Source of the DNA: Salisapilia sapeloensis CBS 127946
Taxonomy: Eukaryota > Protista > Oomycota
DNA: 64,000 nucleotides
Direction: 5' to 3'
Assembly (NCBI GenBank): GCA_023334545.1
Contig: JAADVB010000084.1
Coordinates: 3,358-67,357, forward strand
In this document: positions 1,467 to 64,000 of the stretch, one piece after another
How the letters are laid out: the number at the start of each line of letters is the position of its first letter
How positions within the stretch are numbered: the first letter of the stretch is position 1
Made by a program: the position numbers and the translations under genes
The notes under the pieces: model-generated
Database searches by the model: none
What the model was told of the DNA's origin: nothing
Seen by the model: the letters and a program-made list of their open reading frames with translations, nothing else

Positions 1467-3079
1467 CTAGTCCTGATAAGAAGAAAAGTTTTTCACGAGA
1501 GGCATGACCTGGTCGCCAGCGAACCGCCCGAGAGCTCCACGAGCAGCACTCAGTTCCGAAAAGCTCTGGACGCCATCCGTCAATACGCCACTGGTCATGG
1601 CAGATCCCTTGAGCTCCTCCGTCGCAGCGTTCGTGCGAGAGATGGCGAACGGCACGGGCTCAAAGCTATGGTCTCCGTACCTTACAGGCGTCGTGTGGTC
1701 TCCCGTCACGACGATCGATACCTCCTTGTCGTCTAAATTCAGACGCTTGGGCAGTTCCTCCAACACTTTCTTGACCATCTCGTCCGCCTTTTCAATGAAA
1801 TGAATCTTCTGCTTCACGTCTTTATCATGTCCAGCGTCATCCACTGCCTTGACATGGATGAACGCAAACGTCTCTTGTCCTGTTGATAGTCGATCGACCG
1901 CCGTTTCAGCCTTAGACAAGAGGTTCGTGTGGTAGTCACCTGTGGCACCAGGAGCTTGGACGAGCTCCATGCCGAGCGACATACCCAACCCGGCGATGAT
2001 ACACGTCGGAGCGATCATGAACGACTTCATGCCATGCACCTCTTCAAACGTCGGCACTCGAATGCGTTCACCAGGTCCACGCAGCAGCACGATGTTGGCT
2101 GGTGGCTGTCCTTCTTCCTCCCGTTTCTTATTGATCGGATGACTCGATAACTTTTCATGAAACACATCCGACACTTTGTTGAGGACCTAGATACACATCG
2201 TATAAGTGGATTAGATCGCATCGTATCGACGAAACAAAAGTACTTTGCTAGAATAATCTGCTTCCGACGAATCGTCCATCGGGACAGATGTCTGGAGAGG
2301 AAGGCTACGATGCACAACGTCAGTTACACTGTATGACGGTAGAAGAGGTAGCGTACTTGTCCTTAAGAGGATCTGTGCCAGTCATTTTATCACATAAGCC
2401 AGCGCCTTTGAAGACGATGCCGAGACGATGCTCCGTCGCGTACTTTGTCTCGATACGGACATTTGGGAAACCAGGAATGGGCATGTCGTTTAGATAAGAG
2501 CACAGGTCGATACCCCACGCAGGAAAGTTTCGATCCACTCGTCTCCTCACCACTACCTTCTCTCCGTCTGCGTTCTAAATGACAACATAGGTAGTCTAGG
2601 TCCGACCCAAGAGGATGATACGATCGAATACCTCTTGAAGCGTGGCAAAGTTGCACTTGAAGGCAACATCACCTTGGTCCATGGACAGGCCTGTACCCAT
2701 GGCCTCAAAAGAACCTCGTCCGCGATAATTCCTAGTGCTATAGATTACATGGTATCCTACGATGCGATCGACTAGAGATGATACACGAAGGGGTTGTAGC
2801 CAAGGATAGACATGTGCGCCGTGTCACTGCCGCATGCGTACCCTGGTGCGACAGGATCCATCAATCCATTCAAGCCGCCACCTAGATCGATCCGAGAAAA
2901 ATTCATCATGTCAGAACGCATCCTGACGCAAGAAAGAGAGAGGATATACGAGCAATAGCGTCCATGGCAGGCGTGGAAGCTGCTTCCAATGTTGTACGGC
3001 CATCGAGCTCTTGTAGTGACACGTCGGCTAATCCGTCAATAAGCACAAAGACGACAAGAGGCTGCTTCGTACTCGTCAT
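1467..3079 (-). CDS. Cofactor-independent phosphoglycerate mutase, archaeal-type (ApgM/AlkP superfamily), multi-exon
   Basis: N-term VFVLIDGLADV, GLMDPVAPGYACGSDTAHMSILGY (catalytic Ser), C-term FIHVKAVDDAGH and VTGDHTTP..GDHS metal ligands; about 5 GT-AG introns. Confidence 0.85.
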
Positions 3080-59770: not shown

Positions 59771-61139
59771 GCCTAGTTGTTGGGTTTCGCGGGTCTTTTG
59801 CTCCTTAAATGCTACTTTTTAGGAATGTAAAACTTCTCTCTATATGGAAGTTGGGTTGAAGAGTAGATTTGAAGAGATGCTTCCAATCTCAATAGCTCCA
59901 GGGTAATCACGGCTTTATCAGGTTATTAGTAGAGCGAAGAGCTCTACATGCCGATAGATAGCAAGTCTTTAGGAGCTGTTAACATATTTATAAATGCAAG
60001 CTTTGACGTGTTCATCAAAGAGACCGATGCATCTAATAACGCTACTCAGCTCTAGATAAAGCCTATGCGATGCGAATAGCACGAGGAGACGATCGCTCAA
60101 TACGACACCATGGTCTGCTAGATAGCTCTGTCCTAAGGTTAGACGCTTGCCATATATGTTATACCGTTTTCGCTGAGCATAACCGATGTTGTTTTTCGAC
60201 ATGCCAATGAAAATCTAGCGAAACAGTCCAATGCAACTTTCCCCTTCTATTGAATGCAAAAGCGATCATTCTGTACTGCCAATGCAGTTGCATTTACATA
60301 TTATTGGGCTAACTTGTCTCCCGTGCTCAATTCTATGCTAAAAATTACGTTTCCATCGCCATGCGCTGTAGCATGAGTTGTGTGAAAATTGCTGCATATA
60401 GATTACGCCTTTGAAGCGGACTAGACCTGAATCGATATACCCTCCGATATAATCTATCTTTTCGTCGACTAGGGAAAGAAAGATTATCGAAGCATAACAC
60501 CGATCGAAATTCGCACGTGCTCGTTCTCATATTGCATATTTTATCTCGCATAATCCTCCATGGTACTGTCAGCGAACACGACCATAAATGGTTTTGGTAC
60601 ATCTCGGTCTTCTCCTTTGATGCAATCAATAGGAGGGAATATTCGAGGATACAGTACGCGTCACAAATGTAGCCCAATTATGCCGACTGTCAATGTACTG
60701 CCCCTGCTCTGAAATAATACCGAAGAGCTCAATGTTGCAAGTAAATAGAATGCAATTTCAACCTGAAGGACTTCCGGCGATACACCACGGTACGCTCGAC
60801 ACTATTGCCCGACTATAGCATGACAGAGGAGCGGACAATCTAAGTGAATAGAAGTTGAGAGTGACGTAAGAGAAGGACGAATTGCCAAAGAGTCTGAAAT
60901 TGATGCTTATTACGGTTTTTGCGTATTCATTTTCATATTGCCTTATACTCCTTGCTTAATACCCGATTATCTGCTCAAAGAACACGACCCAAGTAGCTGC
61001 GTGTTTGCGCTAGTATGGCAATGGCGAATATGATCTAAAAGCTGTAGAGCATAAATATATATGAGCGAATCAAGATAAAAATTATTTTCCATTTGAAATG
61101 AAAACAAGTTAGGTTCCTCTCAGTCGTTTGCCCACGACC

Positions 61140-63245
61140 TCATTCTCGCTGACATTTCCTCTTCGATCGCATCTCTCGCTGACACTCTTGATATTCGGCA
61201 AACATTGTGTTATGCTTTTTGAGCCACCGTGCCACTACATCTCGTCCCCTCTTTCCACACCATGTAATCGCACTGGTACTATAGTCCTCCGGCCAATTGC
61301 GATGGAGATGTATGATCGTATCTAAATGGCCATAAATGGCCGCTAGATCAATGGGTTGGTCCGAGCATCCTTCCGTCCGACTCTCGTGGAGAAACTTGAC
61401 GACATCGAGGCGGCCGTGTTTGATGGCACCGTTCAGTGCCTCTTGGTCGCCTTCTTCCGACCGATTTTCATGCAACCACTGGACAACATCCAGATACCCA
61501 TTTCTACTCGCCTCGTTCATCGCTGCAGTCGAGTAACGTTCGTCGCTGCTCTCATGGAGGTACTGGACAATGTCTAGATTCCCGTTGGCAGCTGCAGCAT
61601 CCATGGCCTCTTGAGTGGACCCTTCGCTTCGATCGGCACGCAGCCATTTGACCATCCTCAAGTGACCATTTCGACAAGCGTAGGCTAAAGCATTTTAAAT
61701 GCACCCGTCGTTTCGATTCTCCTGCAGCCACTCGGCAACGTTCAAGCTTTCGTAGGTTGCTGCCGTGCCCATCAGCTCTTTCGTCGAAATGACAAGTTGC
61801 GTCTCCAAGAAAAACTGGACCATCTATAGATGACCAATGGCAGCTGCTACTACCGCACACGATTTGGTGTCCGTTTTCTCTCTCTCTCCAAAAGAAAAGA
61901 AACTGTTTCAATATCAGCATCTCGTATCGCTGCATATTTTACCTGGTCTATATTCGCATGAGGAAATACAACTAGCAGTTTTGCACTATTTCTAGCCGAT
62001 CATACCTTCCTGTATCGTCCTGCAGTGCACCGACGAGGTACGCTACGACATGCATTTGGCCAGAAATGGATGCCTTCCATATCCACTTTTGCTTGTTCCG
62101 ATCTACTAGTTCTGGACAATGCTCACGGATCACATGAATGCAATCGAGATCACCTTCATGCGCACACTGGTCGAGTCCGATACTGACGGGAGCAACGTCA
62201 CCAAGTGCCCGTGGTAACAAGCAGCGCACTACGTTCACACACGCCCTATATTCGCTTCTACTCAGCAACTTCGCTATTTGTTGCTCTTGCTTATGCGCTG
62301 AGAAGTGTTCTAAAAGAAATTGAACAGCTTGCAGTTGATCTTTTGCAGCAGCCTCTTCAATTGCTTTTGACTCTACCAGCTTTTCCTCTGGATGAGCCAG
62401 TAGCCATTTTATTGTTTCGATATGACTATTCCCGGCGGCCAGCTCGAGCGTGTGAGGTGAAGTTTTAGGACCTTGCTTTATCTTTCGAACGGATAACCAC
62501 TCGAGAATATCGATGTGGTTGTTTGAGGCTGCTCCCTCCATCGCTTGGATCGTGGACCCTTCTTGTAGATTTTCTTTCAGCCACTCCAATACATACGAAT
62601 GACCGTTCGTTGCTGCTCCATCCATAGCATCCGTCGTACACCCCTTACTTCGGTTATGGTGGAGACATTGGATTAGCGCCAGATAGCCTCCAGCACAAGC
62701 ATTGTCCATGGCATGGCGGGTGGCAGCACCGCCATCGTCTCAAAGAGAATGGAGACTCTGGATTGTTTCTAGATGACCTCCTTCAGCTGCGTTGCCGATG
62801 CATTGGCAGGTGAACGATGTATACGGTCGATTGGTATACATCCATTGGGCTAGCGCCAAATGCCCTCCCATGGCAGCGGTATCCAACGCTCGAAGGGACA
62901 AGTACAATTGTGGACGGAAGGAATACAGAGTAGTGACGATGTCAAAGCGACCATCTTTGGCAGCGTTTTCAATTGCATCGTCCCACTCGTCACGAGAGAC
63001 GGAGCACTCGACGAGGGTACACTATCGCCGTAAGAGATGACTCGATTCATATTTACTCGCTTTTAAAATGCGTATACTCGGAGATGGGTCAAGGAAAACA
63101 GTGATATACTCAGCTACGTCATCGCTAAGGCATGGAATCTGGAATTGCTTGCTCCGAATTACCACGGAGACGGAAGTGAAGGAAGGGTTTTCATTTGTGT
63201 TGGAACAACCAGCGTGAGCTTCGGAAGGGAAATCGGAGAGTGCTT
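61140..63245 (-). pseudogene. Oomycete-type ankyrin-repeat protein pseudogene
   Basis: Repeats such as MDAAAANGNLDIVQYLHE and TTDAMDGAATNGH; in-frame stops at about 63022, 62740, 61824 and 61695; frame change near the (TC)n tract at 61877-61888; no in-frame ATG. Confidence 0.85.
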
Positions 63246-63499
63246 CATTTATCCTCTAATATGCAAATATCGAATATGTCTCCAGTCTTTGTGATGATTG
63301 CTGCAAAAGTAGCATCCGGTGTCCAGATTATTCGCCATGACTCCTCTAATGGGCCAGATCTGGGTCTGGTGCCATCTTGGGGTACCACGAAGGGCTCCAA
63401 GGAACAGCGTCTTGTTTGTTGTATCGTAAATTCCGTACCGTACTTCCTGAGATCATGCCTACATTATCCACTCATTTTGATTCAACGTCAAGTTGATTG

Positions 63500-64000
63500 A
63501 TGAAACGCAGCTTACCGATCCAAACACATACGACCTCAAAGTCCTCATTATTCAAATATCCACGCAACCTGCAAATGGCAGCTCTTAACTTTCAGAGACA
63601 ACTCGAACACAAGCGGAATGCTTCTGAAGAGGTTCCACCCTCTTTCCAACTATCCGCTCACGCCGTGCTTAAAACCCACTCAAGCGTAGAGCTGGATCAA
63701 CCTGTAGGTAATGGCACGTTTCTGCCAAACTCAGGCCCTACGACTACTTCCACCGTCACCTGTAAATTTTCCCGGTTGAGTCCACCAGGAAGAGTGTGCG
63801 ATGAGATACGACGAGCTTCTGTCGTTATGCGTCAAGTCGTTACGGAAGCTTCACATCTAGTAAACTTGCATGTTCGCCGATGCATCAAGGACGGGAAGTT
63901 TTACCCCAACTAGACCAAAACTTCTTTTACCGCTGTCAGTCCGCTGTGCTTACAAACCCAAAGCACGGTAAACAAAAAAACGCTCGTTACCAAATACCCG
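63500..64000 (+). mobile_element. Probable Fanzor1 (TnpB-derived RNA-guided nuclease) ORF, N-terminal part, with 1-nt frameshift; 3' partial
   Basis: TVTCKFSRL..VCDEIRRASVVMRQVVTEASHLVNLHVRRCIKDG, continuing in the -1 frame from ~63901 as LPQLDQNFFYRCQSAVL; matches my recall of the Fanzor1 N-terminal pattern (vK..l..i...V...s.i..EA..l.NLHv.Rc...g.plP.LdQ.Ff.rc). RuvC lies outside the window. Confidence 0.6.

What the first reader, a model, noticed from the sequence alone, without database searches (positions are those of the whole stretch)
63500..64000. Probable Fanzor1 (eukaryotic RNA-guided TnpB-like nuclease) element at the window edge
Seen: ORF 63500-63913 ends ...STVTCKFSRL..CDEIRRASVVMRQVVTEASHLVNLHVRRCIKDGKF, and the -1 frame continues LPQLDQNFFYRCQSAVLTNPKHGK to the window end. 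An Inr-like TCATTTT lies at about 63472. Established: Fanzor1 proteins are transposon-encoded TnpB descendants, reported in oomycetes, algae, fungi and giant viruses, that use an omegaRNA encoded at the element's 3' end to cut DNA. Inference: this is the WED/REC N-terminus of such a nuclease, inserted in the accessory zone head-to-head with an ankyrin pseudogene. A new oomycete Fanzor family would bring its own TAM and omegaRNA.
Basis: partly seen in the sequence, partly recalled or inferred. Interest (0 to 1): 0.85.

Follow-up and report, generated by a model that had tools for sequence, protein, structure and literature searches.

The report
Broken Fanzor1 gene start at window edge
The last 350 bases of the window are the start of a frameshifted copy of a Fanzor1 transposon nuclease gene.

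Summary
ORF 63497-63913 (138 aa) exists, and a second frame continues to base 64000.

Only ORF residues ~85-133 and the shifted-frame continuation have relatives. They match the N-terminal domain of an oomycete protein family (hhalign E 2.6e-10; hmmsearch E 7e-9, the only hit in the window).

Full-length members of that family (740-816 aa; Phytophthora, Nothophytophthora, Pythium, Globisporangium) carry the Fanzor signatures:
- a DPG RuvC-I motif;
- Glu-x6-CxxC (RuvC-II plus zinc finger);
- the TDG motif;
- RDVNA (RuvC-III).

Their best solved-structure match is Spizellomyces punctatus Fanzor1 (8GKH, E 7e-9). The same N-terminal domain is printed in the Fanzor1 proteins PUl-1, PUl-3, PUl-4 and PCa-1 of Bao & Jurka 2013, so the family is not new.

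The window copy looks dead. One base is missing at GGG 63893-63895, and an independent DNA run shows no gap there. The homologous part has no start codon of its own. The first ~50 codons of the ORF lie in single-copy flank; the multi-copy DNA begins near 63647.

The catalytic half, the omegaRNA and the element ends lie beyond base 64000 and could not be reached. The scan has unchecked Fanzor notes on other pieces of this genome.

The parts
63497..63913 (+). Mechanical 138-aa ORF. It is a chimera of flank read-through (residues 1 to about 50), an unconserved stretch, and the Fanzor1-homologous part (residues about 85-133).
63647..64000 (.). Multi-copy (repeat) DNA. Its left boundary is near 63647, and it runs at least 486 bases beyond the window.
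   Evidence: in DNA run X1 the single-copy unitig (depth 44) ends at 63676. From 63647 the unitigs are short with depths 64-121. There are 4 substitutions and 1 indel against the window in 324 bases, versus none in the 2.7 kb before. A 544-base unitig starts at 63942.
63749..63895 (+). Homologous segment 1, in the ORF's frame: STVTCKF ... NLHVRRCIKDG. It equals profile positions 77-129 of full-length oomycete Fanzor1. By position it is the first WED strand and the first REC helix (inferred).
   Evidence: hhalign E 2.6e-10, probability 96.8%; 44-46% identity to P0011, P0004 and P0003.
63893..63898 (+). Frame break. One base is missing relative to relatives at the GGG run; base 63895 is shared by the Gly codon of one frame and the Glu codon of the next.
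   Evidence: piece 1 ends at P0011 residue 116 and piece 2 starts at residue 115; the X1 unitig 63767-63971 has no gap there.
63895..63975 (+). Homologous segment 2, in the shifted frame: EVLPQLDQNFFYRCQSAVLTNPKHGKQK. It is collinear with profile positions 128-147.
   Evidence: E 0.0032, directly adjacent to segment 1; 53-58% identity to P0011, P0009, P0023 and P0027.
63974..63980 (+). A7 homopolymer. DNA run X1 has A6. With A7 the family-like reading (TLVTKYP, compare family ESKYPAF) falls back into the ORF's frame.
   Evidence: one base left out at 63974 in X1; end of frame 1. The match is only 7 residues, so this is weak.
63472..63478 (+). It is not distinguishable from chance.

Best explanation
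From about 63647 to the window end lies the 5' part of a decayed copy of an oomycete Fanzor1 gene, nearest to the PUl-1/PCa-1 lineage of Bao & Jurka 2013. Fanzor1 proteins are TnpB-derived nucleases carried by eukaryotic DNA transposons. With an omegaRNA transcribed from the element's 3' end they cut double-stranded DNA next to a short TAM, using a RuvC Asp-Glu-Asp site (established: PMC10432273, PMC11423790). In oomycetes they ride in Mariner-type elements with TA duplications (PMC3627910).

Shown here: the homology of the fragment; the full Fanzor1 motif set in its full-length relatives; a frame break at 63893-63895; no ATG in the homologous reading between 63647 and the conserved domain; and multi-copy DNA starting near 63647.

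Inferred: this copy cannot make the nuclease. The 138-aa ORF is an accident that fuses flank to the remnant. The encoded piece would be the first WED strand and the first REC helix.

The stated confidence is for the whole statement. That the fragment belongs to the Fanzor1 family I put at about 0.93; that this copy is non-functional at about 0.75.
For: The hits cover only ORF residues 73-137. One search found 23 family members, nearly all Phytophthora or Nothophytophthora hypothetical proteins. Searches show gene models and ORFs that join this N-terminal domain to GLDAG or IGIDPG, DE[FY]RTS-CxxC and RDVNA motifs. Searches give full-length members of 740-816 aa, many with PF07282. One search finds DPG, then 186-212 aa, then DEF[RK]TSKLCSxC, then C..C, then RDVNA in 8 of 15 members. 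One search gives 8GKH SpuFz1 at E 7e-9 and 9CER GtFz1 at E 1e-3 as the only real PDB matches. One search shows PUl-1, PUl-3, PUl-4 and PCa-1 carrying the same N-terminal domain. Searches place the window pieces collinear with the family. One search shows the repeat boundary and the frame break without a gap in an independent DNA run. One search finds a DDE_3 (Tc1/mariner-type) transposase fragment just upstream of the relative in L004.
Against: Only about 85 codons of homologous sequence lie inside the window. None of the catalytic motifs, the omegaRNA or the element ends of this copy could be seen. The X1 unitigs over the repeat differ from the window at 5 sites, so they may come from a sister copy. 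The frame break is then shown for the lineage, not strictly for this locus. The A-run length differs between the window and X1, so homopolymer errors in the assembly cannot be excluded. Four RNA runs hold 52% of the sampled words of 63650-64000, so the fragment or a sister copy may be transcribed. The structure model of a full-length relative failed (pLDDT 38.8), so there is no fold-level confirmation.
Confidence: 0.8

Rival explanations
1. It is the start of an intact, active Fanzor1 gene. The apparent frame breaks would be homopolymer errors of the assembly, and the true start codon would lie in an upstream exon, as in P. kernoviae relatives that have a short first exon and an intron.
For: Both breaks sit in homopolymer runs (GGG, A7), and the A run differs between the window and X1. 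L005 shows a first exon, an intron and a second exon that starts about 27 codons before the conserved domain. RNA runs hold about half of the words of 63650-64000.
Against: The X1 unitig 63767-63971 has no gap at the GGG run. The DNA upstream of 63647 is single-copy and shows no similarity to family leaders. There is no ATG in the homologous frame before the conserved domain.
Confidence: 0.1
2. It is a host gene or exon derived from the Fanzor1 N-terminal domain (a domesticated fragment), expressed from the promoter region it shares with the ankyrin gene.
For: RNA-library contigs run continuously from the ankyrin region to 63642. RNA runs also hold words from the fragment.
Against: The DNA is multi-copy with copy-to-copy differences. 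The homologous reading is frame-broken. No protein of similar length and sequence exists in 5.8 billion clusters.
Confidence: 0.03
3. It is a chance ORF in non-coding DNA with no relation to Fanzor.
For: No Pfam hit. The protein-atlas hits are below its own reliability line. The first 80 residues have no relatives.
Against: hhalign E 2.6e-10 and hmmsearch E 7e-9 as the only hit in the window. Both pieces are collinear in adjacent profile positions.
Confidence: 0.01

Closest known systems
Fanzor1 proteins PUl-1 (Pythium ultimum) and PCa-1 (Phytophthora capsici), Bao & Jurka 2013, Mob DNA 4:12 (PMC3627910); here represented by P0011, P0010, P0009 and P0004
   Same: The same N-terminal domain pattern: S-V-x-C-K-L ... 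E-I ... Q-V ... N-L-H-V-x-R-C ... L-P-x-L-x-Q-x-F-F-Y-R-C. Identity is 44-46% over segment 1 and 53-58% over segment 2, and the pieces are collinear.
   Different: The window copy is frame-broken. It lacks the basic and acidic leader and a start codon, and no Mariner transposase lies upstream. At 45% identity it is a separate sub-lineage. Its catalytic half was not seen.
Fanzor1 proteins PUl-3 and PUl-4 (Pythium ultimum) and their Phytophthora, Nothophytophthora and Pythium oligandrum relatives (P0040, P0034, P0038, P0043)
   Same: A homologous N-terminal domain (hhalign E 2.6e-10). These full-length members show what should follow: the TDG, DPG, Glu-x6-CxxC and RDVNA motifs.
   Different: Only 32-40% identity to the window piece, so this is the more distant of the two oomycete lineages.
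Spizellomyces punctatus Fanzor1 (SpuFz1, PDB 8GKH; Saito et al. 2023, PMC10432273)
   Same: The best solved relative of the family profile (E 7e-9 over RuvC-II, zinc finger and RuvC-III). Its mechanism is shown experimentally: omegaRNA-guided, TAM-dependent cutting of double-stranded DNA.
   Different: There is no significant sequence match over the N-terminal part that the window encodes. SpuFz1 is 638 aa against about 750-816 aa here, and it sits in a different host transposon.
Bacterial TnpB of IS607 and IS200/IS605 elements (Pfam PF07282, Cas12f1-like TNB domain)
   Same: A RuvC Asp-Glu-Asp site and a zinc ribbon. PF07282 is precomputed on many family members and hit weakly here (E 0.0027, below the cut-off).
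   Different: The N-terminal half is unrelated in sequence, the proteins are eukaryotic with long insertions, and the gene is carried by DDE transposons.

Membership tests
Fanzor1 | Sequence homology to catalogued Fanzor1 proteins | tested here: met
   Window pieces against the full-length oomycete profile: E 2.6e-10 and a collinear second piece. The same domain is printed in PUl-1, PUl-3, PUl-4 and PCa-1.
Fanzor1 | RuvC-I aspartate in a DPG motif | not testable with these tools
   It lies beyond base 64000 in this copy. It is present as GLDPG in relatives. Attempts to extend the sequence failed.
Fanzor1 | Rearranged RuvC-II glutamate six residues before the first CxxC (Yoon et al. 2023, PMC10711439) | not testable with these tools
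   Outside the window. Relatives have D-E-F-[RK]-T-S-K-L-C-S-x-C.
Fanzor1 | C4 zinc finger (PF07282) followed by the RuvC-III RD motif | not testable with these tools
   Outside the window. Relatives have C..C followed by RDVNA and carry PF07282. The family profile matches 8GKH over this region.
Fanzor1 | TDG motif in the WED domain (PMC10711439) | not testable with these tools
   Outside the window. T483, D484 and G485 are invariant or nearly so in relatives.
Fanzor1 | Open reading frame able to give the full protein | tested here: not met
   There is a frame break at 63893-63895 and a stop at 63911-63913 in the ORF's frame. There is no ATG before the conserved domain within the repeat.
Fanzor1 | Carried by a transposable element (multi-copy, with TIRs and TSD; TA for the oomycete Mariner hosts) | tested here: inconclusive
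   Multi-copy DNA starts near 63647. There is no second copy in the window, so ends, TIR and TSD are undefined, and no transposase lies upstream.
Fanzor1 | omegaRNA encoded at the 3' end, and a TAM | not testable with these tools
   The 3' end is outside the window.

The most novel reading that the evidence does not exclude
The fragment may belong to a third oomycete Fanzor1 sub-lineage, at most 46% identical in the N-terminal domain to the PUl-1/PCa-1 and PUl-3/PUl-4 lineages. No protein of 76-241 aa in 5.8 billion clusters resembled it. That sub-lineage could still have intact copies elsewhere in this genome, with their own TAM and omegaRNA.
Probability: 0.25. Interest if true: 0.3.

Novelty: new member of a known kind. 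Interest (0 to 1): 0.15.

Why it matters
It matters little beyond annotation. It marks where a transposon-derived repeat begins at the edge of this gene-poor region, and it adds a divergent, dead copy to a Fanzor1 family described in oomycetes since 2013. Only an intact sister copy elsewhere in the genome would be of practical interest, as a candidate RNA-guided nuclease.

Tried and rejected
1. Pfam on the two pieces gave only Myc_target_1 at E 0.016, taken as chance.
2. The protein atlas gave PDF2_C/START clusters at 0.89 with 158 shared features. That is below the tool's own reliability marks, so it was rejected.
3. The phmmer hits P0001 and P0002 are internally repetitive proteins that match the non-homologous N-terminal part of the ORF, so they were rejected.
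4. Extending the sequence beyond base 64000 failed. Exact-product look-ups of three window ORFs found nothing on record, and a word-based search with the ORF found nothing.
5. AlphaFold2 of the full-length relative P0040 with a 24-sequence alignment gave pLDDT 38.8 and pTM 0.27. The model is unusable, so no fold search was run.
6. A short intron that would remove the frame break was considered. GT 63898 to AG 63913 is only 16 nt and would delete conserved residues, so it was rejected.
7. TCATTTT as a promoter element is at chance frequency.
8. No second copy or other Fanzor remnant was found in the window.

Full report
**What is in the sequence.** The + strand carries a mechanical ORF at 63497-63913: 138 aa from a TTG, with the first in-frame ATG at 63575. 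A second frame, in the phase of 63499, reads on to the window end through LPQLDQNFFYRCQSAVLTNPKHGKQKNARYQIP. TCATTTT is at 63472-63478. The window holds 13 such heptamers against 9.25 +/- 3.1 expected, so it carries no information. Nothing else in the window resembles this stretch at the DNA or protein level.

**Which part has relatives.**
- Pfam gave nothing for either piece, and the protein atlas gave only sub-threshold plant START/PDF2 clusters.
- phmmer of the ORF against 1.84 billion representatives gave eight hits. Two are repetitive proteins that match the N-terminal junk. Six (P0003-P0008, E 2e-5 to 7e-4) all match residues 73-137 only.
- Those six read straight through the point where the window ORF stops. 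They continue with L-P-x-L-x-Q-x-F-F-x-R-C-C, which is the window's second frame.
- A profile of them found 23 proteins, nearly all "hypothetical protein" of Phytophthora species and Nothophytophthora, with no Pfam domain.

**What the family is.**
- Two gene models gave it away. P0014 ends with CxxC ... C ... C and YWDRDVNAVINM. P0024 ends with IPMDEYRTSIMCSCCH.
- The DNA behind P0014 (L003, Nothophytophthora) holds a 734-aa ORF that runs from this N-terminal domain through GLDAGMR. After one interruption comes a 142-aa ORF with MDEFRTSKLCSQC, a second Cys pair and RDVNA.
- A search with that ORF returned full-length proteins of 740-816 aa from Phytophthora, Nothophytophthora, Pythium oligandrum and Globisporangium ultimum. 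Many carry PF07282 (Cas12f1-like TNB domain), and some are named "Transposase" by UniRef.
- Their alignment shows four conserved signatures: TTDGY, VIGLDPGMR, MDEF[RK]TSKLCSxCH, and CHAVLRC..C..YW[DN]RDVNAAIN.
- A regular-expression check found DPG, then 186-212 aa, then Glu-x6-CxxC, then C..C, then RDVNA in 8 of 15 members. The others are truncated gene models.
- These are the signatures that Bao & Jurka 2013 (PMC3627910) and Yoon et al. 2023 (PMC10711439) use to define Fanzors: the DPG motif, the rearranged RuvC-II glutamate, and the Fanzor1 TDG motif.
- Against all PDB sequences the family profile hits only Spizellomyces punctatus Fanzor1 (8GKH, E 7e-9, over RuvC-II, zinc finger and RuvC-III) and Guillardia theta Fanzor1 (9CER, E 1e-3).

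**It is not a new family.**
- Additional file 3 of Bao & Jurka 2013 prints the Fanzor1 proteins PUl-1, PUl-3 and PUl-4 (Pythium ultimum) and PCa-1 (Phytophthora capsici). All four have this very N-terminal domain.
- The paper lists Fanzor1 copies in Pythium ultimum, P. sojae, P. capsici, P. ramorum and Albugo laibachii. It places the Pythium and P. capsici elements in Mariner-type transposons with TA duplications.
- In keeping with that, the P. kernoviae relative in L004 has a DDE_3 transposase fragment directly upstream.
- Yoon et al. 2023 use a Phytophthora cactorum protein as their example of a large Fanzor1.

**How the window fragment fits.**
- Piece 63740-63910 aligns to profile positions 77-129 of the full-length alignment (hhalign E 2.6e-10, probability 96.8%).
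- Piece 63895-63999 aligns to positions 128-147, directly adjacent.
- An HMM of the full-length family scanned over all 1,936 six-frame pieces of the window hits only this ORF (E 7e-9).
- The fragment is nearer to the PUl-1/PCa-1 lineage (44-46% identity and 53-58% for the two pieces) than to the PUl-3/PUl-4 lineage (32-40%). No close relative of similar length exists in 5.8 billion clusters.
- By position the piece corresponds to the first WED strand and the first REC helix. In SpuFz1, residues 21-25 are WED and 96-157 are REC (PMC10432273). This assignment is inferred, because the N-terminal part does not align significantly to SpuFz1.

**State of this copy.**
- Relatives have five residues between R-C-[LI] and [LVF]-P. 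The window gives K-D-G in one frame and E-V in the next, with base 63895 shared between them. So one base is missing at the GGG run 63893-63895. The T run proposed in a sister note is not the site.
- In the ORF's own frame a stop follows at 63911-63913.
- After the A7 run 63974-63980 the family-like reading (TLVTKYP, compare ESKYPAF) seems to fall back into the ORF's frame. That rests on seven residues only.
- Contigs of a public DNA run of the same organism (X1) are identical to the window over 61000-63676 at depth 40-44. From 63647 they break into short unitigs of depth 64-121. These carry four substitutions and one base fewer in the A run, and no gap at the GGG run. A 544-base unitig continues at least 486 bases past the window.
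- So the DNA right of about 63647 is a repeat with slightly different copies. The frame break is not an artefact of this assembly alone, and the first ~50 codons of the ORF are single-copy flank.
- Between 63647 and the conserved domain the homologous frame has no ATG. The basic and acidic leader of the family is also absent.

**Transcription is unresolved.** RNA-library contigs that could be laid stop at 63642. Yet four RNA runs hold 52% of the sampled words of 63650-64000. That is about the share I calculate (56%) if they carry the X1 variant.

**Mechanism and verdict.** The family works as Fanzor1 does. A transposon-borne RuvC nuclease binds an omegaRNA made from the element's 3' end and cuts TAM-flanked double-stranded DNA that matches the guide. 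This is established for SpuFz1 and others (PMC10432273, PMC11423790) and is inferred for the oomycete family from its intact motifs. The window copy most likely does nothing: it is a frame-broken remnant without a start codon, whose apparent ORF is a fusion with flank. The interesting parts (catalytic half, omegaRNA, TAM, element ends) lie outside the window and could not be fetched. A structure model of a full-length relative failed (pLDDT 38.8). The scan holds unchecked notes of Fanzor-like ORFs on other pieces of this genome.

Noticed in passing
window 61140-62907 (- strand): Three ankyrin-repeat ORFs (Ank_2 E 3e-24, E 1e-10; Ank_4 E 3e-5) lie divergent to the Fanzor remnant, and RNA-library contigs cover them. 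One RNA contig skips 62036-62107 (72 nt). The skipped ends read GT..AG on the + strand, which is antisense to the ankyrin ORFs. So 'pseudogene' is doubtful, and a spliced + strand transcript may overlap it.
   Followed up: partly
L003:665-3396 (Nothophytophthora sp. Chile5, MBAC02004204.1): This is a nearly intact Fanzor1: a 734-aa ORF, then a 142-aa ORF that holds RuvC-II, the zinc finger and RuvC-III. One interruption near 2869-3040 separates them. The deposited gene model (387 aa) splices out the whole middle, including RuvC-I.
   Followed up: partly
L004:7021-9521 (Phytophthora kernoviae, MBAD02002698.1): A DDE_3 (Tc1/mariner-type) transposase fragment (E 3e-17) lies directly upstream of an internally deleted Fanzor1 of the PUl-1 type. 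This fits the Mariner-Fanzor1 elements of Bao & Jurka 2013.
   Followed up: partly
P0035 and P0061: Two oomycete Fanzor1 family members are named 'DNA phosphorothioation-dependent restriction protein DptG' in UniRef/NCBI. This looks like a mistaken transfer of annotation.
   Followed up: no
window 63677-64000: DNA run X1 is identical to the window over 2.7 kb of flank but differs at 63709, 63729, 63816, 63865 and in the A run at 63974. Either the assembly mixes repeat copies here, or the laid unitigs come from a sister copy.
   Followed up: partly
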